In this document: one piece after another, positions 6,001 to 51,276 of the stretch | How positions within the stretch are numbered: position 1 is the first letter of the stretch | Layout of the letters: each line of letters begins with the position of its first letter | Assembly (NCBI RefSeq): GCF_902652985.1 | Contig: NC_047029.1 | Location: forward strand, 3,658,001-3,722,000 | Reading direction: 5' to 3' | Length of the DNA: 64,000 nucleotides | From: Pecten maximus | Taxonomy: Eukaryota | The notes under the pieces: generated by a model | The model's input: the letters and a program-made list of their open reading frames with translations, nothing else | What the model was told of the DNA's origin: nothing | Database searches by the model: none | Translations under genes and position numbers: made by a program

Positions 6001-7593
6001 AGATTTTTGACCTCAAGATAATATTTCTACAGCCGGTAGCATTAGCATCAATAGTCAGCTTTCTTTAATTCAATAGATAATTCTCCAATCTCCTACGTAC
6101 CTCGTCCTGATAATCTATATCAACCCCTTCCTTGATTAAACTCAGCGCTTCTTTTCTGCGTTTGTTTCGTATTGCAGCCAACAGCTGCACCTGGAAAACA
6201 ACAATGCTGTCAAGTGATGCCGGCAGAGCAGAAAATAAAACAACTTAACACAACAAACAAAAAGATGTTCAGAAACCAAACTTTAGACAGATTTACACGG
6301 AGAAAAGGCAATTGAAAATAGAACCAAGTGTAAATAAAACGTGGACGTATTCTGCTTTAGGACACTGTACATCTATCTTGTCATGACATATAAAGCAGAA
6401 CCGGGGTAGTATCCATGGAAACATCACTCGTATCAAGCAGCATAAAGAGCTGAATGTACGTATACTCTTGACTTCCTGGATGAATAAATAAAATATTTCT
6501 TGTTCGGTTATCAATGCTGTGGTGATCTTCCATCCGGAGTTGGACAGCGTCTAGTATCCCAATAACTTATTGTAGTAGTTTGGTTGTTGGCATAATAGCA
6601 TATAACGATATTCCTCGACAAGAATAGCAAGATATTGTCATATTGTCACAGTAATTTAACATCTCGATAAGTTGTGCTTTCATTTAAGTGAATATGAGTT
6701 TAAAGTCATATCAATAGGCTCTTAGTATGAATTGAATGTTGATATGTAAATATTACAAGATAAAGTCATAATTCAATAAGAAATATTAATCGTGTCGGCC
6801 CCTCCAGACACTTAACTTTCATATCATGACCTCAGATTCGAATAGTTTCCGGATGACTCTCCTCGACGATGTGAACAGGTAGCATGTGGCAAAACAACCA
6901 GACACAGTCCCCTTTGTGTATTTAATTGTAAATATTTACCATTGAATGGCACTGCCACTATATAACCCTACCAATTCAGTTGCGTGTTCACCAGCCTATG
7001 AACTGCCAACAGGAAGTGATCTCTGCTACTGGTAAGCGCGGGATATTTGAATTTGAAAATTTCAAAACAAAAATCGCATGACAAATAAAAAATCGCAGAT
7101 GGTAAATATAAGAATTGAACGGCTTTCAGTTGGCATTCATAGTCAATATGAATGCCAACTGAAAGCCGTTCAATGCTTAAATGTATCAGAAACCTAAAGA
7201 ACCCTTGAAGAAAGGTGCTATACTTTTTTTTGTTACTTGAAGCAATAGAATGTGAAATAGATATATTAGTTTTTACATCTACAATGGTATCAAACAAAAA
7301 TATCTGTTCAAACACATTCTTCGTGGTTATATAAAATGTATGTGAACAAGTTGTTTACTGACGTCCACAAAAATTGAAAGTAAACAAACTCATCAGCAAA
7401 GTTACTATTATATCACAGATTATCAGAGTACCAATATTGGTAAGGAATTATATAATTCTCTTATTCCCTGGTCGATCCTCTCAATGTCGTTCTCCTTTAC
7501 CACATCACACACACTAAAACAATAGGATAAAGCCTTGATTATATAAATTACCTTTCGTTTATGATCATCAACTGTTTCTTCCAGTTCCGACAT
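1..7593 (-). CDS. Paralog A: ankyrin-repeat/ZU5-ZU5 protein gene, 5' portion (coding exons 1-9; 3' end lies beyond window start)
   Basis: GT-AG-bounded exons: 7593-7552 (MSELEETVDDHKRK), 6190-6101 (VQLLAAIRNKRRKEALSLIKEGVDIDYQDE), 5446-5348 (TGSSPLHHAATKELDDVIEVLLEKNAKLVSADK), 4405-4307 (DGLTALHKAVMCGHVQSIVTLVAWGANVHTPDK), 3861-3763 (KDFYALEYAIKNKAVEIVDLLCQFGTEPLLKDW), 3301-3201, 1830-1488 (GITFDIKR...DGVK), 612-424 (STVIK...INYFAIASREK...FVK) and 216-<1 (FADTT...NPDPNL). Phases join in frame, the 99-bp exons match the 33-aa ankyrin consensus, and the exon structure matches paralogs B and C. Confidence 0.85.
5877..5938 (-). mobile_element. 62-bp 5'-truncated retroposon tail
   Basis: Ends in GGACGTTAA..(TCAA)n on the minus strand. 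Flanked by a 13-bp direct repeat AAAACCTCTGAAA (5864-5876, 5939-5951). Absent from the matching intron of paralog B (about 19843). Confidence 0.6.
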
Positions 7594-10985: not shown

Positions 10986-13900
10986 CCCACACTTTCAATT
11001 TACAACCGTTTGTGATTTATATTTGCAAGAACATGCGAATAACCGATTCTGACAGTCAAAAATCAGTGTGAAATTTTGCAAGAAATGTTATATCCCGACG
11101 AGCAAGTTTTCAGTGTTATGCTAACAGAATATGTTTGATCATCCATTAAATCCTAATATACTTCAGATTGATGAGGAGAGTGTTGTATTCCAGTTTGATT
11201 AAGGCGGAATAGGACACGCATTTGGGTGTTGTTCATGAATTGTCATTGATAAGGCATCGTATTGTGACCACCCCATACTTCAGCTGGACTATCACTTTCA
11301 GCGAGAAAATATGTTGTTTATTCATAACAAACATAGCAAGAATGTCTTATTTGTGTCTTTCATTATTGATGTCATTTGGCCGTATCTCAATTCGTCCTAG
11401 ACAGATGTTTTCGCAGCGTTTCAACCGGGAGATTTGAAAGAGTAGTTCTCATCGGTCTCTCTTGGGGTTGTGACTGTTGGGATATTCCTAGATCTGCATA
11501 TATAAAAAGTTATATATATTGATACAGTAATATATAAGTATGATGTCACATTATAGCATTTGTTCTTAGAAAATTACCTCGTAAATATGTATCAAGCCAA
11601 TTAATGAAGTTAAGCATCATGAAAATTTAAAAAAAAATAAAAACCTCTAATGCTTATATCTATGCGTTGTTCTAGTTCAGATATGATATATACCTTTGAT
11701 GATTTCAGAAAATTATATCAAAGTAGGAGCTAGAAAATAGTGAGAAGCTAATTAACGATTTTTTTTTCAAAATCTTCCCCATATACGCTGTTTCAATGAA
11801 AATCAGAAACAGAAAACCTAATCTAAAACCTGACTTTAACATAAATGGTCAGCACATTATATACAAATAGATATTTGGTTTTTTTTTCGAAATAACACCG
11901 CCTTCATATTATAGCTATCAGTGAAAAATGCATGCAGAAGCGAAAACGATGACGACATCTGTCTCCAGATGAATATCGTTGTCTAAATTACTTCCTATTT
12001 AAACTAATATGTGTACATAAAGCATTTAACCAATATGATGTAGGTAAGACAGGTTATTGTCTCTAATTGTGGTATTTAATCAATGAACTCTATTATGAGC
12101 TTATAGTTGATGCCAGAATTTAAAATGACCAACTAAAACGACGCTGCTATCGGTATACTTATATCCTTCAGGCCAGAGAGAAAGAGGTCGGAGTCAAAGA
12201 CCAATTGACGATTACAAATTAAACTGAAAATGTAAACTATCGGTCTTTGGACAGAACCCCATGGAAGAAAAATGGACAGCAAAAATATAATCCAGACAAA
12301 AAATAAGGAAGTGTATAAAGTATTAACATAGACAATTTAGACAGGTTAAAAAGTACAAAAGTTACCTTGGTTGGTAAGTGTTGCTTTGAATGCTATCGTA
12401 CTGAGTTTCTCCTCTCTTTTGTCTTCATACGGCTCCACGCTCATCTTTTTAGTACATAAGTTGTAACAGCAACACTTAGCCTCGACCACCGGTACCTGGT
12501 AATGCGCTACTGGATAAATGTCAACAGTCCCGGAAATATCCGAAGAAGTATAGCTGATCTCCAGTTCTCGTGAGCTCTCTTGTTTGTCATTAAATATCAG
12601 CTCGATGTTTTCCCCACTCTCCACTGTTATTTCCCCATTAATAACAATCTGAAACATGAGAAGGTTAAAAATAATATCTTCATAATATTGTGACCCAAAA
12701 ATCAAGACATTCGGCAACATCTGTGTTAAACTATGGATAAATACAACAATTACGAGATACGAAAATGTTTCATTTTTCTTACCCTAAACCGCTGTCCATT
12801 CTGAACCAGTGGCAAATCTGCTCCCAGACTAGAACAGTTGTAGCTCTTGTCATATTTCCCTTTCACGTTGTTTATTGTACGTTTTGTTCCGCATGTTATC
12901 GTCATATTTGTTTGTATTTCGTTCACTTCCGGTATTTTTACTGCGACTAAAAAGTTCACTAGTCGATTGTGCTGAGAGGCGTTCATTACTGCATTTGTCG
13001 CAGTGACGGGGCTGGCCTCTAATGATTTCTGGGCAACCGCTGCAAATCTTAAAATGAAACAAACGATGAATAAGAATAATGAGGTACATATGTTTCCTGC
13101 TGAATAAATTGCGTACCGTTGCGATTGAGATGCAACATTTCTATGAGGATTAACATCGTATTGGTAAAACATCCGGAGAAATAGACATGAAAACGGAATT
13201 CTTGGTATGATTAAATTGTAATTAATTAAAAGGCAAATTAAAACCAGGTATTTGGAAGATTAGTGTTTCCTGATTCAATAACGACAAGCCAACATGAAAA
13301 TCGCGGTTAATGATGTCTAAAATGACGTCACTAGTGCGCATAAACAATGCTAGAGATTTGCTGTAATAAGAATACTGTAATCTTGTCCTTGATTTCGCAT
13401 CTAGCAAAATGAACTCAATTTTTTTTAACTTGACAATTAAATGATGTTTGATTTAGGATCTGCTCTTCGGAGGTTTCAGTCAATAATGACAATTTCATAG
13501 CAATTTTGTATTTGAAAAAAACGTGTTCAAAATGTCAGACTTCTGATGTAAGTCGATTTGTTTTAAGAACAATTTCACTAAATGGTCCATTTGGCGGTTA
13601 TTTTGAAAATTTCTGTTTCTTTATTCTCATTCTTGACCGTTCTATGAAGTTCGAAACATTTTTTTTAATTCTATATATAGTAACAGTAACCTTGTTCTTT
13701 GACCTTTGACCGGTATTATTTTAGGTTTTTGTCAAAAATGAAAATGTTTCTAGAATTCATAAAATATTGATTTAAATGATTGCATTTAACTCACCTACAA
13801 AAATGGCTTATTTTAAACTCAACCTTGTCATTTTTAATTTCCGCTGGAATTTCCTCCCACTCCCACTTCAAGAGATTCGGATCAGGATTGGGTGTCTTTA

Positions 13901-14720
13901 AAATAACGATGCCTTCTGATCTAGATTTTGCTGTGATCGGTATCTTAATTTCTATTTCTTGTTTAGGCTCTTTGTCGTCACTTGTGGTGATGTCAAGGAT
14001 ATCTGACATCAGGACAGGCATTCCCTGGTGTTCTTTCATCATTTTGATCCTGCTCGTATTCTTCGATAATCTCTGTCGTATCCACAAACTGTCACATATT
14101 GTAAAGAAATGTTATATATATATGACTAACAAGGTTATAAATCATCGGTTATCATGTTTATACGACCGACAAGATGTACCTTTTGTTCAATACACTGATA
14201 AACCATGTATGGGAAATATTATTGAAGTTCTGTTTATTCCTATGTAATGCTTTAATATCATATAATCAAAACCATGTGAATCCCTTTTGACATACCTTTA
14301 CAAAAAGTTCACAAGATTTAAAAGTGTCAGCAGGGATGTTAATTTCCGCTTCCGGTTCACTTTCCAGTGTCAGTGAGACTGCTTGCTTGAAAATCTGAAA
14401 AGCTTCTGTTTTTTCCCTGCTTATCACAGTGAAATGTGTTATTCCATCGGCTCTGAGCGGAACAGTCATCGTAACAATTGTACTCTGGAAACCGTCAGAA
14501 AAAAACATTAATTACATTGGCATACTGATGTGATGTAACTGAAATAACAATGAGCCATTTCAATGAGCAGCTCATACTGCGACTCCACGTGGTAGCAGCT
14601 TTATTGTAAACATGGATTAAGTGGTGAAATAAAAGAAAATTTCCCAAAATTTGATTTTAGAGGGTAATGTGTCTTAATTTTGATACATATAGAAGACATT
14701 CGATGCCCTAATTTGAATTT

Positions 14721-14908: not shown

Positions 14909-17900
14909 TCTCCCTAGTTTGAAGAGATAGGTAAACGTAAAGTGTAAATATCGTTATTGAAGCAAACATTCAGATAAAATGAAAACATTGAGTGTACCCA
15001 GTTTAATTGGGGGATCTTTAACTTTAGAGTTATTAAGATAAACGTAGCTTAAAAACCAAATAAAAGAGTTCCCATTTACTCTGCAATTATACACATTTAA
15101 TAAGCATCGTTTGATGCAACCCACTGTTACGAAACACCGAAAATACTTCTATATATAATGGACTAACCAACCAATTCTTTTTCCATAGATTTTAGTGTTA
15201 ACGTTTGGGAGTATATTATCAAAATTCCTGAATTCAATATGGCAAGTATGGTTTATAACAAAAGTTAGGGTTTCATATAACACGTAATAAAAAAAAAGGT
15301 TTGGTCATTCAGCTCAATTTTTTTCCAGTGTAGCCATTCTGAAAATGGGTGAATTTCGCAGTAAAAATTCTCAGAAGTCTGATATGTTTACCTAATAATG
15401 ATTATTACCTGAACTTTTCGGAAAAAATTCAATCGGACTTTCTTATGGATAGTTACCTATCAGGCTACATATCTATTTTGTTACTTCATAACATACTGGC
15501 CAAACAGTGGCTGCCAGACATTTTATCCTTGACTCAACTTTCTATACACAGGGGATGTTTCAAAAGTCTATTTTTTCAATTGGTTGGTTGTTCCCTATAG
15601 GCAACCTCCTATTACCTTGATGTCTTTTTTTTTTTTTTTTTTGACAACACTACCATTTTTTGTCGCTGGCTATAGGACAACCTCCTCTTACCTTAACGCC
15701 ATCCTCGTTTTTGATGTCTTCCATGATAATGCTACCATCTTTTGTCGCTAACCGTACGACAACCTCCTCATTTTTCCTGAGCAGCCTATCTACGGTCAGT
15801 GTTAATGTGATTGATTTGACCCCTGGTCCCCAGGTCTGACATTCTAGTAGATGGCCAAACACATTCTCATCAGGTTCCATTTGTAGCGGGCTACCATACT
15901 CCTCTCTCTTTTTACACAGGTACAGGTAGTAGCGTTCCTGATCCGTTTGGCACTGTGACATCAACTCTTGTGTTTTCTAGATGGACTAATGGCCCGTCCT
16001 CAGGTGTTATTCTTTTTACGTCAAATGTGATTTCTCTGCGTATGATCAAGTGAAAGCTTAAGATTATTGCATTGCATTTGTTTCTCGCGCTATGAATGGT
16101 AGCATATATTTACAGAAGCACTAATCGCATTGCTATGACGGTACCAAAGGCAAAGAAATAGCTAGAACATTTGTTCCTGACTTAATATATAAAAAAAATA
16201 TTCTGCTCAAAGCTACGACTTATTTTTTAGAAATTGGAGAGAAAGGAAGGCGTTTTCATCTAATGCATGTTGTGATCAAGAATGTTTGGTGCTTCAGACT
16301 AAATTATGCAAAATTGTAGATAATGTACGCTCTTAGCGTTGCATGATATGTCTTACTGCTAACTTTGAGTATGCAAAGTCATTAATTAGACATTTTACGG
16401 AGTTGGTAGGACATTGAACAAAAGAATATTTCCTTAGTACTTTCACACAGTATGCTGTTTGATGAAAAGGAATTTAATTACAAGAAATGGTATACGATTG
16501 ATTGGCATCCAGATGGGAGCCCGGACCCAACCAGATTATATAAAAAAGACATATGCTATACAAGTGAAGATAACATTCATGAATTGATTTAGTAATATAT
16601 GTTGTACATGTCAATTAAAGTACATATAATTGTATAATATGATAGTAGACTCGACAGTTATGTTAGATGTCAGAATTATTGAAACCACGAGATAGTCTGA
16701 AAAAGCCTCAAGAGGTGTAACAATATAGATGTTCTGATTTGTTCAGATGATACCTTAATGATAAATCAGATAGTTCAATTGTAAGCTAAACAATGTAAAT
16801 AAAACAGAAGACCAAGTTATCAAAGTAAAGGGCACAGTTCGTTTTGTGAGAAAGCAATTTTTCATATATTTTTCTTGTGATTTTATCCACTGTCGATTCT
16901 TCTGTGTCGTTATTCACGTGTTCATGAAATAAGTTTATGATAATGAAGTTACCTCGCCGATATGTCATCTTTGCCTTTCATCAAGAAGACTTAAAAGTCA
17001 AGGAATGCGTTTCCTAAACTTACAATTTTCGACAACTTACATAGAATGTGGGTATGATTATGAGGTCAAACGTTTGGTGAACCTCGAAGCAACGTGGCTT
17101 GGTGACTTGGACTTCTAGTCTATCAAAATTGCAGCACTCTTATAAAAAATCTATGAGACCTGATTTCAAAGGCAAATAGTATGACCATTAGTCATATTAT
17201 GATCCGTGTGTCCCAGGTGATATGATATAAAATTATACACTTCTGTATGTATCTGGGGATATGTTTATGTAATACGTATTCTGTGTAGTACATTATCTAA
17301 CTAGGTTGCACGTGCGTGTTTACATTACGTTACTACATACAAGGATAATTTATAAAGTATAAAAGATGTTTTGCTTCTTTCGAAATCTGTTTCTTACTTA
17401 TGTTTATAGCCTGGGAACACTATGCATTGCTTTTCTATTGTCACTCCCATGTCATAGTCTTCCTTTCTTTTTCTTACTCCGGGCGTTGTTAACCATTCCT
17501 GTGGAAATCATCAAGGGTTAAACACTTATTTGATTAATGAATCACTATTAAATTACACGTGTTAAAAACACATCTAATTTAAATATATATATATATATAC
17601 AATTATTCTATGATTGTGTCATGAACTCGGTTCATAACAAGATATCCATTTCTTGTTGATGTGTTCCATGAGGTATTGACAGCGTACTTCATTTAGATGC
17701 AAACGCTCAAAAAACAAGACAAACTAAGTATGGATATTTAAATAGTTAGCGATTCAAAAAATATTGATTGAACAGTTTTTCATATCTGAACATAAATTCC
17801 TGTATTAACTATCAGATGATTTTTTTCATATTCTAAAATCTATTTCAAGTCTGCACTTTCAACCGTTATGTGTCTGATTGGTCGAGAGATCTATTCAAAA

Positions 17901-27165: not shown

Positions 27166-30100
27166 TCATGATTGGTCCTTTATAAGGTCTTGTCGTCCAA
27201 TTGCAGCCAAGGCCTCCTTCAATTGACTCACCATATTGTTTTTGGCCAGACTTATGAGCCATTGATTTAGTACAGCCATGAGTTGATCACCTTCCTCTAC
27301 CGTGCCGTCCAATGAGTTTTGTAATATCTTGACATCGATTCCAATCTGGACAGCCAATTGTCTAGTCTCCTCGGGCGAAAGATCGATATCAACCGCTTTC
27401 CTTAGTTCCTCCAATCTTGAAGGTTGTGATCGCATGGAACTCTCCAGGTCTGTAATATTATAGATATTGTTATGTAACTATTTGCATTCTGAGTTATAAA
27501 TCTTTCATCGTTTATGTAAAAATATGCTTCTCACTTAAGGCAAAAAAACAATATGACTAGTGGCTCGAACTCATGATCTACGGTACTTAATAGTGTATAT
27601 AATATATATCAGAGACAACATAAAAACACTTAACGATTGTGTATCAGAGACAACTATTGTTTGGATTCCCTGAATAATTAATGGATTTGCATTTGTACCC
27701 CGGATCAGTATATCTATGCCCATTATTGCATTCGGTCTGCTCTCGACTTCCACCTTCGTTTTTCATTTTCTAAAAAAAACATATTTAAGAAACACAAAAG
27801 TTACCTCGTTTAGTAAGTGTTGCTTTGAATGCTATTGTTCGCGGTGTCTGCTCGATTTTGTCTACATCCGGCTTTACACTCGTCTTTTTAGTACCTGAGT
27901 TGTAACAGCAACACTTAGCCTCGACCACCGGTACCTGGTCATGCGCTACTGGGTCACTGCTTCCCTCGTATATGTCTACAGTTCCAGATAAATCCAGAGG
28001 GTTTTCTGAAGTACTGACGATTTCTAGGGCTCTTGAGCTCACTTGACTGCCCTTGAATATTAGGTCGATGTTGTAATCATCGCTTTGTTCTTTAAAGTTG
28101 CCTTGAATTACAAACTGAAACAAACTGAATTTACTGATAATTTCGACATATCTAATTTGTGTAAATGGACAAAATAAAAAAAATAAGTGTCCTCGTGGAA
28201 GAAAATAAATTGAAACTAATCAAACCTGACGCAGACACAAATAAGCGCTTTCATGAAGAGCTCCAATAATGGAGCGAAAGCGCTACTTTGTGTCAGTTTT
28301 TACTATTTTAAATATATATATCTAGCTCGCTGCAAAATATGAAGTTATCCACATATATTTTAGTGGTCTGAACCTGAAACCAAGTCACTCGCTAAACTGA
28401 CACAACCTATCTCCCAAAACTAGAACTTGTCAGAAAAGTGTAAAGGTGTTATGATTTTACTCACCTTAAAGCGTTGCCCCTCTGGAACAAAAGGTAAATC
28501 TGGTCCGAGGCTGAAGCAGTGGTACGACTTGCTATACGTTTTCTTTTCTGACTTTATTGCATGTTTAGTTCCACATATAATGATCATATTTGTTTTCTTT
28601 TCGTCCAATTCCGGTATTTTTACTGCCACTACAATCTCCACTTTGCGCTTTTTGTCAGAGGCATCCCTGATCATATCCGTTGCGGCCTCAGGATTGGCTT
28701 CGTATAAGGGCCTGGAAATCCCTACAATGCTTAAGAATAAATTATTATTTATAATACAGATAGTTTTTAGATACTTTTATTTTTTCAATTACTGACCTAT
28801 CTATATATAGAAAGTCTTCATTTTCCGTTAAAGGATGTTATCGAACTGACGAAAAACTGAATCAGAAACTGTAACTCTTACTTCAGTCGATATGGAGACT
28901 TTCGGACTACAAGGTGACTACCCGGGTTTCTGGTAGCTTTTCATGCTTTAATGAACATACGTAACATGAACACGAAATCACGAGGCTTAATCAGGAGTAT
29001 CGAAAATGGCCGTGATAAAATGAAATGGGGTGTTTCCAAACTAAATGCGTACAAGGACTATTCATCTATATGATTTTGTTTTAATTACCTCGAAAAGTGC
29101 CTGATTTTAAACACAGCCTTTCCATCTGTATCAATGTGTGCTGGGATTTCCTCCCACTGCCACTTCAGGAGATTCGGATCAGGATTTGATGTCATTAAAA
29201 TAACGATGCCTTCTGATTTGGATTTTGCGGTGACCGGTATCTTCATTTCTACTTCTTTATTAGGCTGTTGTTGGTCACTTGTTGAAATGTCAAGGATGTT
29301 TGTCATCAAGACGGACTTATTATCACTGGGGTTTTCTTCATGATTTTCATCCTGTTCGTATTCTTTGATTATCTCCGCCGTGTCCACAAACTGAAACATA
29401 TTTTAACAATGTGCTATATCTATAACTAATCATGTATGCACTGTTTATTGGCAATGAAAGGACAATTCTGTGCTAGCCACATCAGAAAATATCAATCGGA
29501 AAGGGGGAACATAGGGGGTTCGGGATGTGATTAACACGATTTGTATACAATGTTTATTTTACCTTGACCAATAGCTGGCAAGATTTGAAAGTTCCAGCTG
29601 GGATGTCTATTTCCGCTTCCGGTTCGCTCTCCGGTTTCAACATGACTGCCTTATTGGAAATCTTGAAACCTTCTTTTTTCTGCCTGCTGGCCATGGAGAA
29701 GCATGTAATTCCAGACGTTTGGAGAGGAAGAATTAGTGTTACCTTGGTGTTCTATGAACGATCAGAAAATAAGAATATAATTTCATGTAGAGTTTATAGA
29801 AAATATGTGAGAATGGTAGTCAATAATAAAACGTTGGTTACATTGTCTTGATGTAGAGTATCGCTGGTTTGATGTAATTAAGAATGAATGAATCATTTCA
29901 ATGAGCAACAGCTTATATTGTGACTCCTTTGACGTCATTGAGTAATACGTCACCATAACCTAGAATTTAGCGGTAAAAAAATAAAGTTTGAGAGGGTTTA
30001 TATAAGACATGAAGGTACATTAATCTCAATAATTAGACAAATGAAATATGTTTAATGTAGGAGCTTGACAAAATGCAACAAATTGGAAATAAGATTACAT

Positions 30101-33100
30101 TTCTATGTACGGTTTAAACCATGGATCATCATTGGATTTTGATAAAGGCAACGTCTAATCAAGAGAATACTCGAGGAGAGATAAGAAGACGACTGCTTTA
30201 ACGACATATGGAGTTATACTAACGGAATAAATGTAATCGGATGAAATGGATTAAGGCTTTTATATAGAAACTTTCCACTTACCCCGGCACCTTCTACCTC
30301 ATTGACCTCGACGTCGACAACACTTCCACCTTTTGTCGCTGGTCGTAGGACAACCTCCTCATTTTTCCGGAGCGGCCTGTCTACGGTTACTGTTAGTGTG
30401 ATGGATTTGACCCGGGGGCCCCAGGTCTGACATTCCAGTAGGTGGCCAAACACCTCCTCCTCCGGGGAAAGTAGTGGCGGACTGCTGTATGCTTCCCATT
30501 TTTGACACAGATACAAATAGTAGCGTTGCTGACCTGTCGGCACAGTGACATCAACTTTCGTGTTTTCTAGATGTACTATTGCTCCGTTATCAGGTGTAAT
30601 TCTTTTTACGTCAAATATGATCCCCCTGGGAAATAAATTGAACGTTAGGAAATATCATGTTGGTCTTTTTCATGATAAAATTGTAAGATATCTGTAGCAC
30701 TGGTCAATATAGCGGGAATAACTGGAAGGTAGGAAAATAAAAGGCCGTGCAAGTTAAAATAACTTTTGTATGAAATAAGGCGATATGTTCCGAATGGCTG
30801 TAAAAAGACTCGAGGAACCATTGAGTGATCTTCAAGACGACCTAGCGTTATTTATACAGTTCTGTTTATTGTTATCAACGGGTTATCATCTAAAAGATTA
30901 CAATGATGCGAAATAATTAAATATTTCATTTTTCCATATTTGGGTCAGTGATGGCACAATTTTCTAGTTTATTTAGATCGCTTGATAATTTAGAATATAT
31001 AATATGTTTCCGGATATTGTATGATGACGTGTGTGTGCTAGGTAAGTAATACATTATAACACCCCCCCACACCCTTAATCCCACCCAAACCCCGCCCAAA
31101 CCCCGCCCCACCCCTTTCCCCATAGGAAAGCATTACAGACGTTTAGGAAAGTTTCCTGACGAAGATTTTTGTACTTCATTCCAATAATGTTTGCCTATGC
31201 CAATTATTAAGTTAAAAGATTTCATTTAGTTATGGAACTTGGATGAGGGGATTGGTTTTATACTATAGTCCCCTGCTTTTAACTAAGCTATCACGTCCTC
31301 GTTCGTGTATGAATTAGCTTTATCTATATGCATCACTAATAAAACAAACTGTATAAGAGGTGGTTCTGTCGTGTGGCAATATTTTTTCTTACTTTTGTTT
31401 ATAGCCAGGGAATAGTCTTATCTGTTTTCTTACTATCTTCGCCATTTTATCTTCGTCCTTTTTCTTCTTTGTCCCAGGCTTACACCAGGACTATGATAAC
31501 AATAAGTCATTATTATGATTTGATACATTTGTATTAAGTAATACATTAATAAATATTCAGAATGTTTAATAATTCGCCAGCGTATTTAATCGTCAACTCG
31601 GTTCAGGTAACATTCAGATTTGGTTTTGTTGAATATTGATTTACGGTCAGTCAAAAAGTTGAAGTCATCAAGGGAAAACAAAACACTTGAAATGGATATA
31701 CACCAAGTTTCACTGGATTATTTAAAAGGTCAACAATTCTGAAAAGTATCGAAAGTATTCCTTTCAAGCAAGTCGATTGTAAAATAGCATATTTTTTATT
31801 CATTTATATAATATTTATCTTGTAACCTTATAAACAAACATAAACAATATTACAAATCGGTGATGAGATTTTTCTACTGCGCCATACTCATAGTGATTCT
31901 CACAAACAAATATATCAATACTTACACACAAACGTCCTCACACACAAAATTGTATACTCATTGAAGTCAATGTTGGATGAATTATTTGATTTACACCAAT
32001 ACACTTGTGCGCATAATAATGAGGGAATAAGTTTTGACTATCAAATATCAAGTTGAATAATACTTCTCCCTTTTGCTCCAGGTATTAGTGATTCTATTTT
32101 TGAAACAATCGTTTTGGCAATTTTGAGATACAAAAACGATTGTATATTTTTGTATGATGTTATATTCTTTTATGTTGTTGGTCAATGCCTATGCCAATAA
32201 ATTGTATAAGATATGTTGTACTTCTTGGTATTCCCTCATTAAATGAATCATTGCTTCTCTTTCAGAGTTGAAGAAAATGACCACAAAAGTAACTGCTATA
32301 CCGTAGTTATACAAATAAGAGGTGTGAGTGTAATGATACCTTTCCGACTAGTAACTGTTACAATTCGAACTTTAAACAACACAAGCTACGTATTCGAATG
32401 ATCCGACTTATAGTTAGGCCATACACTGATTTTTCAAAGGTCATAGGTCACAGTTATATAATGTCTTGTGTTACATAGTTTTAACAACATGTGAGCATAT
32501 TGAAAAAAGTATGCCTCGGACATTTCAGTATCACAAACGTCAAGTCTGCATCTTGGTAGGTAGGTATGGTTATGGGGAGTAACTTTTATAAAGCAACGTA
32601 CCACAGACATGACGGGATCATTCAATAAAGGGAAACAACTCTACATGGAATATGATTATCTTCCTGACATACTCTACATTTGAATGTTATACAATTTTCA
32701 TTGACAATATCTGAAAGGTGACCGCTCTATTTCTGTCTTAGTTTTCTTTTTAACTGAAAGGCGTATGTATTACCATAAACTTATCAGTTACAAGCGTAGG
32801 CGAGAGTACTTTTGTCCTCTTTAAGATATAGACGGTAGTTTGATCATCATTTCAAATTACAGTATAACGCTTTATCATGTAAGATAACAAACTCATAAAC
32901 TTATCATATATAAGACTGGTGATTCTCGATTGGTATCCATATATGGACAAAAACGAATGACGACATAATAATGAAACCATAATTCAAACTCAAAAACGAT
33001 TAAAAGAGGCAAAATATACCAAAAAAATACAGCTTCGAATAGACTCTCATGGAAGGGAACAAGGGGGATAAGATCAGGCAGTCTGGAAGAGGAAACGTCT

Positions 33101-36100
33101 TCTGCGCTATCAGCGAAACGCATAGATCTAGGTCAAATTCGAGTTAAGGCACAATTTTAAATGGGAGTTTGGGTGGTGACAGCTGAACCACTGGGACTAT
33201 CAACAAGAACCACAAATGTCTGACTTCATATCGCGTAAGAAAATAGATAATTTCCAAATGATACCATAATGTCGACTGCCAATCTTCCCTGTGGTCTTTA
33301 CAACCAGCATCTTTCTTTTTTTATTTCGTTAGTAGTCAACATCGTTCACGGAAATCGTGATAATTGAAACGAAACCTAGAGTATCCAACATCTGGGACGT
33401 GCAAACACCGTAGGTAAGGGATGCATGGATGTTGCTATACAGAAAGGGAAAATTAACACTTGGGAAATTCAGGTCATCAGTTGTAACCTGATCCTGTTGG
33501 TTACGTAGTAACGACGGTCAAGGTAAGCGGCTGATGTTGAAGATTTTGTGTTGATTTCAAAAACAAGCCAACAAACAAAGGAGTAGAGTTTGTTCTCTTG
33601 ATAAATCATGTGACATCTGACAACAGCGGCCGACAGTACAATACTATCGTAGAGGAAAATTAGTATACCAATAATAAAAATGTGTGTGTATATGATACAT
33701 ATGTGATTGGTTTAACTCACCCAGTCAACAAGTACCGGTGGTGTGCCAAACTGATACAACAGATCCACTACGGCCACGTGCTTATTCTTGACGGCATACT
33801 CCATAGCAAGATAGCCTTTCTGTAATGATCAAGTTAAATGAGATGTAATAATGTTACAAAATGTAAATACATATTTCAAAACCATGAATATTACTCACCT
33901 GGATCATATGCACCACAGCAGAAGCAGATGGCATCATGTCTACATGAGTGTTAGGTTGTTTTCATGGTAGATTAACGTACCCATTTTCTTTCTAGTATAT
34001 TACTTGGTTTGGTTTGGTTAATTTTTTAGCGTCCTATTAACAGCTAAGGTCATTTAGGGATGGCCTCCCGTGCATGCGACATGCATGCGTGTGGTGAGTG
34101 CGTATGTGTGTTTTGGGAGGCTGCGGTATGTTCGTGTTAAGTCTCCTTGTGATAGGCCTGAACTTTAGCCGATTTATAATAGTAATACCTCACTGAAGCA
34201 TACTGCCGAAGACACCCAGCCGGTCATATTATATTCACAACGGGCGAACCAGTCGTGCCACTCCTAATATGCTGAGCGCTAAGCAGGAATAGAAACTACC
34301 ATTTTTAAAGACTCTGGTATATCTCGGCCAGGGGATAGAACCCAAAGCCTTCCTTACAGGGGCGAACGCTCAACTAAAGGCCAAAAGTGAGGCATTGTCA
34401 AGGAAAACAATAGGAAGAAGAAAGTTTTTAAGAAAGAAGAGAAAAGATAAGATCACAAATTTAGTCGCCTCTTACGATCATGCAATGGGGGCAGCAGGTA
34501 CAATTCTTACGCCCTACTTGCAGGGCAGCTAGTATATTACACACAGAACGAACGGAAAATAAAGACGAAACGGAATATTGTTAAATTGTGTTAAATGATA
34601 AGATATCTTTTGTGAAATAATTTAGTATCCATTTACACAAAAATGCAAATTTCGCATCGATGAAGACCAGATAACGTGCTGTATCAATATATAAGGAAAC
34701 GTTACATTTCATTCGGAGGAAATCTTAGCCGGTAGAAGAAAATAATTGGACATAATGCGAAGTCACAACTTTACCTGATCGAGCGTATATACAACTGCAC
34801 CGCAAGCCACCAACGTCACTATGGATCGTGCATGGCCGCGCATAGCAGCCTTATGGAGGGCCGTCCGTCCATTCTACAGCATTGAAAAAACATGATGTAT
34901 TCTACTATCAGACACACAACATAGACAGAGCCCGTGTTTACATGTAGATAGGACCGTTTTGTGTTTAATATAGCATATAGATACACACAGTAATAATTTA
35001 AGCTTTACAACAACAACAACAACAACAACAACACAACAACATCAACAACAGCAACGGTTATTATCAAGCCTGCTATGTCTAGTTATGATAGAGCTCAATC
35101 ATTTCAGTAAAGTGTTTTAAATAGACATGTAGATCCATAGTTTAAACAACAAATTGAAAAAAAAATCAATAATTAATCTGAGAAAATAGTTTAATACTAG
35201 TTTGATTAATTCATTCGTTTTATAGGACTTAGTGTAGCCGACGTGATGACAATCAATTAAATGTGGAGTAACCTTATATATAGAATGACGGCATATAAAT
35301 ATTATAAATGAATTTAAAAAATATTCAAATACATGAAGCCTGTAAACTTACATATCTAATTATTTCATTTGGACATTACAGAAATAGTCCGAGTTTTAAA
35401 TACGATTAAGTATCCTAATCTGCCCCAGCATCAAATATGTTCCATCTTTAACGTACTATACAAGTCGATCTTATCGTTTTTGCTGTTGAATTATTGTTGT
35501 AACGCAAGACTGATATGAATTATGTTCATAGAATATAAACCATAACCATTGTCTGTGTAGAATATGTGATTCAAAGATAATGATGTTTTGTGTCAAGGGA
35601 AGGACAGGACAATGCAGCTACCTTCATGTATATTGAAGTATCGTGTATTTTGGACACAATTTCAAAACATTCCTATATTCTAATAGCCTTTGTCTATTAG
35701 TTTGCTAAAAAATAGTCTGTGTATGTCATTGGAATAGAAACAAACAGTAATGAATTCAACTGACACGCCACTTACATTGTCCCAGGCCATAATCTTTGCG
35801 CCTTTCTCCAGTAGCTCTTCGATGACGTCATCATACCCCTCGTTGGCCGCATAATGTAAAGGGTAGGATCCAGTCTATTGAATATATATATATACATTTT
35901 GTATATATATACCGTAATATTTTTTTATCATATGCAACTGCCCAATCACCGTATTGTCAGAGTGATAAGATGGTATTCTGATTCAAAGGATTTCTCCATA
36001 GAATGCTTAAACATACATGATATCTCTATTTATATACGATACATCAATATTTCTGTAGGATTTACATGTACATTTCTATTTATATACCATGCATCAATAT

Positions 36101-48100: not shown

Positions 48101-51100
48101 TCTGTAGGATTTACATTACTCTTTATATACGATACATCAATATTTCTGTAGGATTTACATTAAACATGAGTGTTATGTCGGCTTTCTTTACATCACTTTT
48201 TATAGTCATGACAACAAACACCCGTATGAACACTACATAGAATTAAAATGTAAGGACCAATGTCGATCTCCCAATGAAATTAAGCTACAAATAGGAGAAA
48301 AATCGTCAACAGTTTTATATTAACTTCATAGTACTCCTCCATACCTCGTCCCGATAATCTACACCAACCCCCGACTTGATTAGACTCAGCGCTTCTCTCC
48401 GTTGTTTATTCTGTAAGGCGGCCAGTAGTTGGATCTGACAAAGAAAAAACAATGTGTTAACAACAAGAGAATGGCGACTATAGAACAGAACTATCTTTTG
48501 TCAGATTTCTATTGATAATGACTTACAGGTTCTGTTTAAATCGCCCTCAAAATTAAAAAAAAAATCCAAATTTCTTACACTCTATGTTATTTTTCAGATT
48601 TCTTTTAATGATGAAGTTATTCAAAATATCCCAAAAGAAATATTTACATGGAAAATAACACCAAGCTTTCATGAAGAATAGTCATCTTAAGCTTTATCAG
48701 AAGAATCCTGAAATGTTTCTCTCTCAAAATGAGAGTCAAGGAAATGAACAATGAAGCAACAGCCATTTAATCTTTAAATCCAAGATGGCACCAATAAAAC
48801 AAGTTGGAATGTGATCGGCTCATACCCACGGGTTTGAATTTGTTCAAAATTCAACATCTTAAAACATTCTTTTCATATCTACTCTCTAATGATCTTTATT
48901 GTCCCTATCACCTCTTTCTCTATGCTAAGTTCTACCTCTCTACTTCTAGTCTTCCTTCTAACTTCTCATACCTATACTTGGAATGTTCCGCTGTTGTTCT
49001 CCCCTGACCCCTATGACCTCTTTAGTTCCCGGATTGCAGAGTGTGTGCTCATGCTAGTGTTCACGTGTGTGTTTTTCCGACCTGGTCGTCGCTCGATTAT
49101 AATGTTTGTATTCAATGACAATGGGTAACGATTTAGTGTCTAATAGACGGCGATCGGATGTTTTTACCTATGCACGCACGATGCCCTTTCTCGGAAACCT
49201 CCTCAGATCATTAAATGGGGTCATGGCGTGTACAAAGTATATTGTATTCAACTTAGGTTACGTTGTTCAACTGATTTTATCTTGCCTTATCAATAACTCG
49301 AGTTTTTTCCAAGTGCTACAATTGCTTCTGTTATGCTGTAATGACGTTCTTCTAAATCTAGGCCCTGATGACCATTCTAAAGATATTTCTATTTTTCATT
49401 TTAATATTCGTAGCGTGAGGAACAAGTTGTCATATCTAGAAAATATAGCATCTGATTTTGATATTGTCTGTATCACAGGTAATTTATTCAGAACCAATAT
49501 AGTTGATGACCAGATGTGCCACTGTGGCTCTCCAATTGAAGACAGCTATCATATCTTTTTTGACTGTATTACTTATGCTGAACAGAGAACGACACTCTTC
49601 AGAAAACTGTCTGCATACAATCCTCTATCTGTGAACCTACTTCTTTTTGGAGATTTAAATATATCTGTTCAGGAAAACGGAAATTTTTTTATACACACTC
49701 AGCAATTCAACCAGGATTCTGATAGATTCTAGTCATCTATGCTTAATAACACATAATTTTAAAAGATATGTCTCATTTAAATTGTTGATTGATTTATCAA
49801 AGGGAAGCACCCTTGCCCGAAGACACAATTTTGGGCTTTGTTTTAAATCTGCTTGGTGTGTATATGGTTTGTATTATTATTTTGTACCTATTATACATAA
49901 ACTATTTAGTACGACGACAAACAACTATTGTAAGTCACTCGAGGATGTCGTCATACTTGGAATAACATCTCGTGCTATTTAAGGACCCAGAGTAATTACC
50001 TGGATAGGTTCCAGAAAGGAAAAAAAATATCTATACTTGGATTGACAGGTTTATCCTGGAGAATGTACAGCTCAAATTGTACATAGTAACATAGTTTATA
50101 TTAACTAACAATATTATTTGTTGTTACTTTATCTTCATGTCAAAAAAAAATGTAATTGATGATATAGTTTTAACGCAATAAATAAACAAAGGCACAATCA
50201 CATTCGCGCTTCAACGAAGAAAATTTACAACCTTCAGACCGCTATCGCCATCGCTAATTCACACTACACTTACAGTTTAAGCTAGTCGCTAGTACACACT
50301 GGTAGCCATGAGTAACAAAATCATTGAACCTTACAGCTGGATGTTCCATAGATTGGTCAAACCGTGTGTTTAGTTTAAGATGTATCAGAATTTTTTTTTA
50401 AAAAGTTGAAATTTAGTTTGCTTATAAATATAAGAGATGATATTTTCTACTATTTCAACTAGTTATAACAATACTAACTAATAAGTTGTTTTTTATATTA
50501 TTACATAAAAGTATGCTATATAGTGAACTGACCCCCTCTAGAACATTAAAATTATAGATAAAATTGAGCTTTATGATTTTGATCCTAAGTTTCAAACTAG
50601 GGGCAGATAATCTAGTATTAGAATTTAGCTTGTCAAATTTTAACAAAACAACTTAGGGTCTGGTGGCCAGTCTAGCAATTTATCAGTATGCATTTAATTA
50701 TAAGCTTATAAATATAACACAATTTATATGAACGTTTTCTCTTGGTATTGCGGGCTCCTCTCACACTAAAACGCACTTCCATCCGGGTCAACAAACGTGA
50801 TTGATATCAGTTCATATAATATGTTTCGCATATGTTGTGTTATTTTATGTACATTTTTACAGTGATATTGTATAGTGTATTATATTACTTTGTATTTTCA
50901 TTGTAGATATATCATATTGCATTGTATTTTCATAATATATGGTATAAAACATTGTATTTTCATAGTATATTAATTACATTGTATTTTCATAATATATTAT
51001 ATTGCATTGTATTTTCATAATATATGGTATACAACATTGTATTTTCATTGCATATTATATTACATTGTGTTTTCATAGTAGATAGTATATTATATTACAT

Positions 51101-51276
51101 CATATTTTCATATTATATTATATTGTATTTCATAGTATATTATATTGCATTGTATTTCCATAGTATATGGTATACAACATTGGATTTTCATTGCATATTA
51201 TATTACACTGTGTTGTCATAGTACATTAAAATACCTTTCGTTTCCTGTCATCTTCAATTTCCACAACTTCCGACAT
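27166..51276 (-). CDS. Paralog C: intact 739-aa ANK(x~4)-ZU5-ZU5-UPA-Death domain protein with HFS autoproteolysis-like motif
   Basis: 12 GT-AG exons: 51276-51235, 48434-48345, 35874-35776, 34873-34775, 33819-33721, 31490-31393, 30625-30283, 29751-29563, 29390-29089, 28729-28465, 28114-27805 and 27449-27166. The sum is 2220 nt (739 aa plus stop) with all phases compatible and an in-frame stop just upstream of the ATG. Motifs: ankyrin (GSYPLHYAA, GRTALHKAAMRGH); ZU5 junction (CFSMASRQK..EPEAEIDIPAGTF); WEEI..AVFKIRHFS; UPA-like GQRFKFVIQGNF..SGTVDIY; death-domain-like LNQW..LKEALAAIGRQDL. Confidence 0.85.
33030..33620 (-). mobile_element. Degenerate Penelope-like element reverse transcriptase remnant
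   Basis: Minus-strand translation fragments RTNSTPLFVGLFL, EINTKSSTSAAYLD and DDLNFPSVNFPFLYSNIHASLTYGVCTSQ resemble PLE RT motifs (GTNCAPLLADLFL, SASYLD, DDFNF.IVNFPFL.SNIP...YGVYISQ). Frameshifts and an internal deletion are present. Confidence 0.55.
34004..34528 (-). mobile_element. Composite Meta-SINE-like element with 12-bp TSD
   Basis: TSD CTAGTATATTAC (33992-34003, 34529-34540). The minus strand has a degenerate tRNA-like head, a Meta/MESC-like core (TTTAAAAATGGTAG..GCTTAGCGCTCAGCA) and the same AAATGACC..GCTGTTAATAGGACG..(CCAAA)n tail as the V-SINEs. Confidence 0.75.
36020..38634. repeat. 44-bp minisatellite, left arm (intron 2 of paralog C)
   Basis: Unit TTTATATACGATACATCAATATTTCTGTAGGATTTACATTACTC; period 44 read directly. 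Confidence 0.95.
38635..39948 (+). repeat. 5' LTR (1314 bp)
   Basis: TGTCACG...CGTAACA; about 10 substitutions and one 2-bp indel versus the 3' LTR, counted by eye. Confidence 0.95.
39952..39969 (+). promoter_or_regulatory. Primer binding site complementary to tRNA-Leu 3' end
   Basis: TGGTGGCAGCGGTGGGAT, 3 nt after the LTR, is the reverse complement of ATCCCACCGCTGCCACCA. Confidence 0.85.
40331..43621 (+). CDS. Gag-protease-integrase-(RT N-terminus) polyprotein
   Basis: Likely start MSTTQE at 40331. SCAN-like capsid CTD (LMLRDQFI..LKERSPTS..LADQY), CCHC knuckle CYNCGKLGHISYDC (about 41246), protease LRDTGCS (about 41528), integrase H..H..CRSCDIC, D-D-E (AVDLIG/SDQG/VERFN), GPY module, and RT start PYSAPVVMVKKKDG. 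Confidence 0.9.
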   Translation: MSTTQELIAIGKEMKYEGTALQDFVTEQQALARDEREKERSFRLEMEKKNLVLEQAKIEAEREARSHARLEQEHKWKLELLQAGGGEQRADVQIPREAMIQRGPKLPAFDESHDNMDAYLQRFERYAEAQKWEHSHWGANLSALLKGKALEVFSRLPVDKALDFEELRKALLLRFEMTEEGFRKSFRTARPEGGETFSQFATRLENYMERWVELSKTEKTYKKLKDLMLRDQFIHCCGQELPLFLKERSPTSFVEMARLADQYVEARGTKASQVTGRGQKSGYSKPHERGNQDAHASKSSAKDKKCYNCGKLGHISYDCRLKKNVSGNKVASVVEEENRKKQASDAKRVTRKDRTSAIDKSHVKDSTTLSVSCDLRSSQSAGMPVMRGCVGSHCVSVLRDTGCSGVVVRRCLVDKDSFTDRVQLCTFADGSKLEAPIVVVEVDSPYFIGTTEAWALETPLYDLIIGNIPGAFPPDKPDKEWKMKEHDVQAVETRAHVKKKGSAYKSLKVPDLMTDMCSVEDLKDEQQRDPTLVKFRKLASEEQTYERDDGGSSTIFYQKGVMYRKFQSPKVRNGMTFRQLIVPERYRDMVMRLAHESVMSGHLAAKRTTSRVLSEFFWPGVQAEVIRFCRSCDICQKTFPKGRVPKAPLGDMPLIDTPFKRIAVDLIGPLEPATERGNRFILTVVDYATRYPEAVALKGIETERVAEALVDIFSRVGIPSEMLSDQGAQFTSEMMREVSRLLSIRQLTTTPYHPMCNGLVERFNGTLKQMLRKMSVERPKDWDRFINPLLFAYREVPQESLGFSPFELLYGRAVRGPMMILKELMTKDIPDEEVKTTYQYVMDLRERMEETCQLASEHLRDAKIKQKRHFNRRARQRHLKAGDRVLVLLPTKANKLLMQWRGPYEVVEKVGPTDYRVNRDGKVKVLHVNLLKKYEEQKKSREDLLTVTTEGVMACVMSMVIDEEDDDNGEELSQVLETLPCDRGKEGIQDVEISQDLSDEQRSEVRTLLEGYSDVLTDQPGRTVLAEHDIVTTTAEPVRVKPYPLPFNTKAVITEEVEKMLEMRVIEPSSSPYSAPVVMVKKKDGSNRFCIEFQET
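43602..44690 (+). CDS. Reverse transcriptase-RNase H (out of frame with upstream ORF by a 1-nt insertion)
   Basis: LDLSKGYWQ, MPFGLVNAPATF, FIDDIL; RNase H TDAS, ERECLA, TDH, ADYLSR. ATTGAATTTCAGG would read I-D-F-R if one A at 43605-43606 were removed. Confidence 0.9.
   Translation: MNFRRLNRVTVFDAEPMPNTDEIFSRLAGARYFSKLDLSKGYWQVPLTERAKPMTAFTTPKGLFQFRVMPFGLVNAPATFSRMMRKLLAGMDNLENFIDDILIYTSTWQEHLDVLKELFLRLREAGLTARPSKCALGFPNLPCLGHVVGSGRLELEQAKVKAIAEAPRPTSKKQVRSFLGLAGFYRKFIPNFAAISVPLTDLTKKGNPNKVVWEESHDIAFNTLKKMLSAKPVLKLADLDQEFILRTDASDSGLGAVLLQEDADKKLPVAYASRKLLPREQNYAIVERECLAIVWGIQKFEPYLYGREFVLETDHQPLTYLHRSRTANARLMRWALTLQPYRFRIRAIKGVDNVGADYLSRI
44748..44762 (+). promoter_or_regulatory. Polypurine tract
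   Basis: GGAATGGGGGGATAT immediately before the 3' LTR. Confidence 0.8.
44764..46079 (+). repeat. 3' LTR (1316 bp)
   Basis: Near-identical direct repeat of 38635-39948. Confidence 0.95.
46080..48162. repeat. 44-bp minisatellite, right arm
   Basis: Resumes in register directly after the TSD. Confidence 0.95.
49106..49732 (+). mobile_element. Internally deleted CR1/L2-group LINE: 2A-like/APE N-terminus fused to C-terminal Cys/His domain
   Basis: LLLLCCNDVLLNLGP, HFNIRS..NK and DIVCIT (APE start), joined at about 49478 to CHCGSPIEDSYHIFFDC..LLLFGD..RF* (ORF2 end). No RT in between. Confidence 0.7.
50870..51220. repeat. Degenerate ~30-bp AT-rich tandem repeat (TATATTACATTGTATTTTCATAG-like)
   Basis: Recurrent CATTGTATTTTCAT units. 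Confidence 0.65.

What the first reader, a model, noticed from the sequence alone, without database searches (positions are those of the whole stretch)
29089..29165. PIDD/Nup98-type HFS autoproteolysis motif at the ZU5-UPA boundary (HFC in paralog B)
Seen: C reads WQWEEIPAHIDTDGKAVFKIRHFS|S (HFS at 29099-29091). B reads WEWEEIPAEIKNDKVEFKISHFC|R (13805-13797). Established: PIDD1 self-cleaves at HF/S at the end of its second ZU5 (context W-DI...ARFQVTHFS) to free UPA-DD, and NLRP1/CARD8 cleave at F/S between ZU5 and UPA; canonical ankyrins lack the motif. Inference: C self-cleaves into a ~452-aa ANK-ZU5-ZU5 regulatory piece and a ~287-aa UPA-DD effector. Ser-to-Cys in B keeps a nucleophile, which hints at selection on the chemistry.
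Basis: partly seen in the sequence, partly recalled or inferred. Interest (0 to 1): 0.78.

Follow-up and report, generated by a model that had tools for sequence, protein, structure and literature searches.

The report
Scallop ankyrin-ZU5-UPA-death protein, HFS self-cleavage motif
A king-scallop gene for a small ankyrin-repeat/death-domain protein carries a strictly conserved His-Phe-Ser motif at the spot where PIDD1, NLRP1 and CARD8 cut themselves in two, so it probably self-cleaves, but nobody has shown this yet.

Summary
On the minus strand, HFS is encoded at 29099-29091 and ends an exon. RNA contigs from two studies join 29089 to 28729, so the mRNA reads HFS|SIVGIS. The window is Pecten maximus.

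Pfam and PDB sequence searches see only ankyrin repeats and a Death domain. An AlphaFold model (pLDDT 85) matches ankyrin-B ZU5-ZU5-UPA-DD, UNC5b, rat NLRP1 FIIND and CARD8. It places HFS in the loop before the strand that starts UPA.

The family is small: 33 cluster representatives, and all ten looked up are bivalve proteins. H and S are two of only 11 invariant columns. The nucleophile position reads Ser 27, Thr 1, Cys 1.

The single Cys is paralog B. B has two frameshifts and no detectable Death exon, so it says little about selection on the chemistry. The end of the first ZU5 is not conserved, which predicts one cleavage site, not PIDD1's two.

Cleavage itself is inferred, not shown. I read this as a new ankyrin-headed variant of the known self-cleaving ZU5-UPA-death-fold proteins.

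The parts
29091..29099 (-). HFS codons (H451 F452 S453 of the 739-aa model). Predicted scissile bond is F452|S453.
   Evidence: Sequence; invariant H and S in the family; loop between strands 135-140 and 145-150 of model mc9560810a59f.
29089..29390 (-). Exon for the C-terminal two thirds of ZU5-2. It ends two bases after the HFS codons.
   Evidence: RNA joints 29390|29563 and 28729|29089; P0001; fold match to ankyrin ZU5.
29563..29751 (-). Exon for the last strands of ZU5-1 (..SGITCFS|MASRQ..) and the start of ZU5-2 (EPEAEIDIPAGTF).
   Evidence: RNA joints 29751|30283 and 29390|29563; sequence.
30283..30625 (-). Main exon of ZU5-1.
   Evidence: Splice sites; RNA contig X1 record 4; 68% identical to ortholog P0006. 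In P0006 this region is all-beta in model 2 and lies nearest ZU5/PIDD1/UNC5 clusters in the ESM Atlas.
31393..31490 (-). Linker exon between the ANK repeats and ZU5-1.
   Evidence: X1 record 5 carries this exon, with 10 letters of the ZU5-1 exon on one side and 41 letters of the ANK exon on the other.
33721..33819 (-). ANK repeat exon (4th repeat).
   Evidence: tblastn with P0006; weak Pfam Ank; joined to the linker exon in RNA.
34775..34873 (-). ANK repeat exon.
   Evidence: Pfam Ank 3.7e-5; tblastn.
35776..35874 (-). ANK repeat exon.
   Evidence: Pfam Ank 2.8e-7; tblastn.
48345..48434 (-). Second coding exon (first ANK repeat). By homology only.
   Evidence: tblastn with P0006 and P0034; AG/GT sites.
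51235..51276 (-). First coding exon, MSEVVEIEDDRKRK. By homology only.
   Evidence: tblastn E 5e-4; ATG and GT donor.
28465..28729 (-). First UPA exon. It starts with the strand SIVGIS that follows the predicted cut.
   Evidence: RNA joint; P0001; model strand 145-150; UPA match to the rat NLRP1 C-terminal fragment, model 151-332 to 976-1107.
27805..28114 (-). Second UPA exon.
   Evidence: P0001; RNA joint 27449|27805.
27166..27449 (-). Death-domain exon, including the stop codon.
   Evidence: Pfam Death, 23.4 bits against a 22.6 cut-off; six helices in the model.
13797..13805 (-). HFC codons of paralog B.
14015..14025 (-). Frameshift in B's HFC exon: 1-nt insertion relative to the closest paralog.
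   Evidence: tblastn finds two frames; DNA alignment.
15935..15945 (-). Frameshift in B's ZU5-1 exon.
   Evidence: tblastn HSPs 16037-15939 and 15940-15728 lie in different frames.
1..6193 (-). 5' part of a further paralog (HFS). Its HFS exon straddles the window start.
60173..63805 (+). ANK exons of paralog D (P0002, HFS). The gene runs past the window end.

Best explanation
Gene C encodes a 739-aa cytosolic protein: four ankyrin repeats, ZU5, ZU5, UPA, Death domain. It belongs to a small family seen here only in bivalves. The family has diverged so far that Pfam sees neither ZU5 nor UPA.

Inferred mechanism: once the second ZU5 folds, the HFS loop is strained by the Phe anchor. The Ser453 hydroxyl, helped by His451, attacks the F452 carbonyl (N-to-O acyl shift followed by hydrolysis, as in PIDD1 and Nup98). 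This splits the chain into ANK-ZU5-ZU5 (452 aa) and UPA-DD (287 aa).

Also inferred, by analogy with FIIND: the two pieces stay together, because the new N-terminal strand SIVGIS pairs with the ZU5 sheet. Loss or rearrangement of the N-terminal piece would then free UPA-DD to assemble a death-domain signalling complex.

Shown here: the motif, its splicing into mRNA, the fold, its position in the fold, and its conservation. Inferred: the cleavage, the continued association of the pieces, and the signalling.
For: Sequence and splicing. Open 739-codon model with F452|S453. Fold (pLDDT 85.3): Foldseek 4d8o E 7.6e-17, 3g5b 3.8e-11, 7crw_A 3.9e-7, 7jn7_B; VIA 4d8o Z 15.6, 3ud2_A Z 13.7 at rmsd 2.7. 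HFS is in the loop 141-144 between two strands. The rat NLRP1 C-terminal fragment aligns from 976 to model 151, which is 7 residues after S969 and after S144 respectively. ESM Atlas nearest clusters are ZU5/UPA/FIIND by features and LRR-ZU5-Death (PIDD1-type) clusters by structure. Conservation: 27 Ser, 1 Thr, 1 Cys at the nucleophile position; H and S are 2 of 11 invariant columns among 17 sequences at about 29% mean column identity. Purifying selection on the exon, dN/dS 0.10-0.42. Literature: the PIDD1 and Nup98 HFS motifs and the NLRP1/CARD8 SF|S motif at this position are all self-cleaving.
Against: No cleavage data exist. The model coordinates could not be inspected, so burial of Phe and the geometry of the scissile bond were not checked. 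Residue-level equivalence to S969 rests on alignment end points only. Pfam ZU5, UPA and FIIND models and PDB sequence searches find nothing. The first four coding exons rest on homology, not on RNA. The HFS could be conserved for folding alone.
Confidence: 0.65

Rival explanations
1. HFS is only a structural feature of a divergent ZU5 fold. The protein would be an uncleaved mini-ankyrin-like scaffold or adaptor that signals through its Death domain as a single chain.
For: The closest solved folds are ankyrin ZZUD and UNC5b, and UNC5b has Leu at the Phe position. No cleavage evidence exists. Three homologs read HLS.
Against: His and Ser have no obvious folding role, yet they are invariant while most of the protein has diverged to about 29%. 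The only substitutions at the Ser position are Thr and Cys. HL|S/T is itself the self-cleaving GPS motif of the same superfamily (own knowledge for the GPS motif).
Confidence: 0.22
2. The cluster is decaying and the motif is a relic with no function in this scallop.
For: Paralog B has two frameshifts and no Death exon. RefSeq models of all copies are truncated.
Against: Gene C has an open 739-codon model. It is spliced correctly in RNA contigs from two studies. dN/dS is 0.10-0.32 among C, A, D and the window-start copy. Orthologs are conserved in other bivalve genera: Mizuhopecten, Argopecten, Mytilus, Saccostrea.
Confidence: 0.03
3. Gene C is cut twice, like PIDD1: at the end of ZU5-1 (CFS|M) as well as at HFS|S.
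For: C reads ..GITCFS|MASR at the end of ZU5-1 and B reads HFT. Phe at this column is 86% conserved. FIIND cleaves without a His at position -2.
Against: The residue after Phe is A, I, M, T or S across homologs, so it is not restricted to nucleophiles. In model 2 this segment lies inside a strand, not in a loop.
Confidence: 0.1

Closest known systems
PIDD1 (LRR-ZU5-ZU5-UPA-DD)
   Same: ZU5-ZU5-UPA-DD C-terminal architecture. An HFS tripeptide at the ZU5-2/UPA junction, where cleavage at S588 yields the UPA-DD piece PIDD-CC. PIDD1-type LRR-ZU5-Death clusters are among the nearest structures in the ESM Atlas.
   Different: Ankyrin repeats replace the LRRs. There is no conserved HFS at the end of the first ZU5. 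No detectable sequence similarity. Seen here only in bivalves, and tandemly duplicated.
Canonical ankyrins (ANK1-3: 24 ANK repeats plus ZU5-ZU5-UPA-DD)
   Same: The same order of domain types. Ankyrin-B ZZUD is the best structural match: 4d8o, Z 15.6, E 7.6e-17.
   Different: Only four ANK repeats, about 740 aa, and a conserved HFS. Whether ankyrins lack the motif was not tested here, and the paper that would say so is not held.
NLRP1 / CARD8 FIIND (ZU5-UPA-CARD)
   Same: A ZU5-UPA fold with a cut between Phe and Ser just before the first UPA strand. The UPA domain aligns with the rat NLRP1 C-terminal fragment at a register consistent with S144 = S969.
   Different: The motif is HFS, not SFS. 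The death fold is a Death domain, not a CARD. No NACHT-LRR. Pfam FIIND is not matched.
Nup98 and GPS/GAIN autoproteolytic domains (ZU5 superfamily of Zhang et al. 2012)
   Same: HFS in Nup98 and HL|S/T in GPS, each in the loop before the last strand. GAIN domains match model residues 2-153 at Z 8.4-9.4. The homology has been proposed before.
   Different: The protein contexts are unrelated, and these domains have no UPA or Death domain.

Membership tests
ZU5-UPA-DD supramodule proteins (ankyrin / UNC5 / PIDD1 type) | ZU5 beta-sandwich fold directly before UPA | tested here: met
   Model residues 1-168 match ankyrin-R ZU5B at Z 13.7, rmsd 2.7, 147 aligned; ankyrin-R ZU5A at Z 11; Foldseek 4d8o, 3g5b.
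ZU5-UPA-DD supramodule proteins (ankyrin / UNC5 / PIDD1 type) | Match to the Pfam ZU5 (PF00791) or UPA profiles | tested here: not met
   No hit on the exons at E<=10 or on full-length homologs at E<=0.01. A genome-wide PF00791 scan hits five other genes and none in this cluster.
ZU5-UPA-DD supramodule proteins (ankyrin / UNC5 / PIDD1 type) | UPA fold between ZU5 and the death fold | tested here: met
   Model 151-332 matches rat NLRP1 UPA at Z 9.2. Ankyrin-B/G ZZU chains span model 1-336 at Z 12.8-15.1.
ZU5-UPA-DD supramodule proteins (ankyrin / UNC5 / PIDD1 type) | C-terminal Death domain | tested here: met
   PF00531, 23.4 bits against a 22.6 cut-off, on exon 27169-27435. Helical bundle 338-419 in the model.
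Self-cleaving ZU5 (PIDD1 / Nup98 HFS type) | H-F-S in the loop before the last ZU5-associated strand | tested here: met
   HFS = residues 142-144 of P0001, between strands 135-140 and 145-150. The same arrangement appears in ortholog model 2.
Self-cleaving ZU5 (PIDD1 / Nup98 HFS type) | Nucleophile (S/T/C) and His at -2 conserved across homologs | tested here: met
   27 Ser, 1 Thr, 1 Cys. H and S are invariant in 17 long sequences.
Self-cleaving ZU5 (PIDD1 / Nup98 HFS type) | Phe buried in a hydrophobic pocket that strains the scissile bond | not testable with these tools
Phe is 88% conserved, otherwise Leu.
Self-cleaving ZU5 (PIDD1 / Nup98 HFS type) | Observed self-cleavage that a Ser-to-Ala change abolishes | not testable with these tools
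   Needs protein expression.
PIDD1 orthologs | N-terminal leucine-rich repeats | tested here: not met
   Pfam finds Ank repeats only. Model 2 residues 8-170 match DARPins at Z 22-23.
PIDD1 orthologs | HFS at the ends of both ZU5 domains | tested here: not met
   The end of ZU5-1 reads CFS, HFT, NFT, RFA, YFA, DII and others.
FIIND proteins (NLRP1 / CARD8) | SF|S motif, Pfam FIIND match, C-terminal CARD | tested here: not met
   The motif is HFS. There is no FIIND hit, and the death fold is a Death domain.
Canonical ankyrins | 24 ANK repeats forming the membrane-binding domain | tested here: not met
   Four repeats, helices 8-133 of model 2. Four ANK exons in gene C.

The most novel reading that the evidence does not exclude
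A bivalve-restricted, tandemly expanding family works as an ankyrin-headed tripwire of the NLRP1/CARD8 kind. Constitutive HF|S self-cleavage leaves UPA-DD held by ANK-ZU5-ZU5. When a pathogen or stress destroys or engages the ankyrin piece, UPA-DD is released and nucleates a death-domain signalosome. This would be an invertebrate, Death-domain counterpart of functional degradation.
Probability: 0.15. Interest if true: 0.65.

Novelty: new variant of a known kind. Interest (0 to 1): 0.4.

Why it matters
Self-cleaving ZU5-UPA modules control PIDD1, NLRP1 and CARD8 signalling in vertebrates. Their invertebrate counterparts are barely charted, and Pfam misses this family altogether. The family offers a simple, testable prediction: one Ser-to-Ala mutant should abolish cleavage. 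It would also show this switch joined to an ankyrin-repeat head in bivalves, animals known for lineage-specific expansions of death-fold immune genes. Finally, it corrects truncated RefSeq gene models.

Tried and rejected
- Pfam on single exons and on full-length homologs finds only Ank and Death.
- phmmer and a family profile against PDB sequences find nothing meaningful.
- hhalign of ZU5-1 against ZU5-2 sub-alignments gives no signal, E 0.52. The two domains are recognisable as ZU5 only by fold and language-model features.
- VIA search with the 649-aa ortholog model was swamped by DARPins, so it gave no independent fold hit for ZU5-1.
- Wang et al. 2012 (ankyrin-B ZZUD) is not held, so the statement that canonical ankyrins lack the motif stays untested.
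- The reading that HFC in B shows selection for a nucleophile is rejected, because B is disrupted. Caveat: dN/dS of B's exon (0.28-0.42, 72 codons) is not clearly neutral. The breaks may therefore be recent or, less likely, assembly errors.
- No complex prediction was run.
- The spliced 739-aa model of C was not sent to any search or fold tool as joined letters. RefSeq P0001 (identical to the exons from MASRQ onward) and ortholog P0006 stood in for it. A script joined the exons only to check frame, length and motif position.

Full report
**What is in the sequence.** On the minus strand, CAC TTT TCG (29099-29097, 29096-29094, 29093-29091) encodes HFS. It is followed by AG and a GT donor at 29088-29087. 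The downstream acceptor ttcttaag|C puts the next exon's first base at 28729. AG+C makes Ser, so the protein reads HFS|SIVGISRPLYEANPE. Paralog B reads CAT TTT TGT (13805-13797), then AG|GTGAGT, and its next exon gives HFC|RFAAVAQKSLEASP.

**Origin and gene model.**
- The window is G000:C15:3658001-3722000 of a 918-Mb genome.
- Exact look-up names Pecten maximus. P0001 = XP_033762800.1 (LOC117344233, 430 aa) is gene C from MASRQ.. to the stop. P0004 = XP_033762949.1 is B.
- Five paralogous copies of the HFS exon lie within about 105 kb on C15: four HFS and one HFC.
- RNA contigs from two studies show the GT..AG joints 30283|29751, 29563|29390, 29089|28729 and 27805|27449.
- One contig links the last ANK exon, the linker exon 31490-31393 and the ZU5-1 exon.
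- So the HFS|S junction exists in mRNA, and ANK and ZU5-1 belong to the same transcript. The RefSeq start is an under-call.
- A script that joined the exons, only to check frame and length, gives 725 open codons from 48434 to 27166.
- A 14-codon first exon lies at 51276-51235, with ATG and a GT donor.
- Exons 1-4 rest on homology to scallop orthologs only.
- The joined model was not sent to any search or fold tool. P0001 and ortholog P0006 were used by id instead.

**Is it ZU5-UPA?**
- Not by sequence profiles. Pfam finds Ank and Death only, on the exons and on ten family members. PDB sequence searches are blank. A genome-wide PF00791 scan hits five other scallop genes but not this cluster.
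- By fold, yes. The AlphaFold2 model of P0001 (pLDDT 85.3) matches:
  - ankyrin-B ZU5-ZU5-UPA-DD: 4d8o, Foldseek E 7.6e-17, VIA Z 15.6;
  - ankyrin-R ZU5B: Z 13.7, rmsd 2.7, 147 aligned;
  - UNC5b: E 3.8e-11;
  - rat NLRP1 FIIND: E 3.9e-7;
  - CARD8.
- ESM Atlas features point to ZU5/UPA/FIIND clusters (0.96), and Atlas structure to LRR-ZU5-Death (PIDD1-type) clusters (TM 0.59-0.60).
- In the model, HFS (142-144) sits in the loop between strand 135-140 and strand 145-150.
- The free UPA fragment of rat NLRP1 aligns from residue 976 to model residue 151. That is seven residues after S969 (the nucleophile, F968|S969) and seven after S144. The register fits S144 = S969, but it rests on range end points only.
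- The ortholog model (P0006, pLDDT 83.4) shows four ANK repeats, two beta domains and UPA, with HFS again in a loop.
- Support for ZU5-1 as a ZU5 comes only from the Atlas. hhalign of ZU5-1 against ZU5-2 is silent, and the VIA list was filled by DARPins.

**Conservation.**
- An exhaustive HMMER search with the exon profile found only 33 cluster representatives among 1.84 billion.
- All ten looked up are bivalve proteins: Pecten, Mizuhopecten, Argopecten, Mytilus, Saccostrea.
- In the motif column, 24 read HFS, 3 HLS, 1 HFT and 1 HFC. Four fragments do not align there.
- Among the 17 long sequences (mean column identity 29%), only 11 columns are invariant, and H and S of HFS are two of them. 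Phe is 88% conserved, otherwise Leu.
- dN/dS over 72 codons of the exon is 0.10-0.42 between paralogs.
- By contrast, the equivalent position at the end of ZU5-1 is not restricted to nucleophiles: T, S, A, I, M.

**Paralog B.** B's ZU5-1 exon changes frame near 15940. Its HFC exon has a 1-nt insertion near 14020 relative to the closest paralog. No Death exon was found. Its RefSeq protein starts at an internal Met in mid-ZU5-2. A half ZU5 cannot be expected to self-cleave. PIDD1 needs its upstream sequence to do so. HFC in B is therefore not evidence for selection on the chemistry.

**Mechanism (inferred).** PIDD1 and Nup98 cleave at HF|S through attack by the Ser side chain, with His at -2 and a buried Phe. 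NLRP1 and CARD8 cleave at SF|S in the same structural position, and the pieces stay associated through the first UPA strand. By analogy, gene C should split into ANK-ZU5-ZU5 and UPA-DD. There should be one site rather than PIDD1's two.

**Comparison and novelty.** The architecture is that of a miniature ankyrin. The motif and the predicted product (UPA-DD) are those of PIDD1. It is not a PIDD1 ortholog, because it has no LRR and no first HFS. It is not a FIIND protein, because the motif is HFS and the death fold is a Death domain. It is not a canonical ankyrin, because it has four repeats. ZU5/FIIND autoprocessing has been predicted in other invertebrate immune architectures. My four paper searches turned up no description of this family. 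I rate it a new variant of a known kind and of moderate interest. Cleavage remains to be shown.

Noticed in passing
window 40232-44690 (+), flanked by 36026-38635 and 46081-48162: A long retroelement-like reading frame (1129 aa, then 362 aa in another frame: gag-like zinc knuckle, integrase-like and reverse-transcriptase-like stretches). It sits in the 12.5-kb intron of gene C, between two arrays of the same 44-bp satellite. This explains the odd GC content and skew at 36-44 kb. Observed only.
   Followed up: partly
window 29680-29700 (-) and 14410-14430 (-): The end of the first ZU5 reads ..GITCFS|MASR in C and ..GITHFT|VISR in B. These look like a second F-S/T site, but the position is A, I or M in many homologs.
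   Followed up: yes
L009 (G000:C3:49891584-49894802, - strand open frame of 393 aa): A transmembrane protein with a canonical Pfam ZU5 ends that domain with ..VTVSLKHFT|LYTLIG, an HFT motif in the same position (UNC5CL-like). L007 on C18 reads NINTFT|LYTC, and the UNC5-like gene in L010 has no such motif.
   Followed up: partly
model mc9560810a59f, residues 2-153: The ZU5-2 model matches GAIN domains of adhesion GPCRs (BAI3, BAI2, CD97, CELSR1) at Z 8.4-9.4. This fits the ZU5/GPS/Nup98 superfamily proposed by Zhang et al. 2012.
   Followed up: partly
window 51971-52810: A 60-bp tandem repeat (14 copies, 97% matches). On the minus strand it reads as an open 245-aa frame of MFRQGKxSHxYTEHFKExxK units, just upstream of gene C's first exon.
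   Followed up: no
window 27166-51276; also the genes behind P0002 and P0003: RefSeq models of C, A and D all start inside or after ZU5-1 (430, 471 and 578 aa). Yet ANK exons lie upstream of the copies in the window, and RNA joins them for C. The annotation appears to cut the ANK head off these genes.
   Followed up: partly
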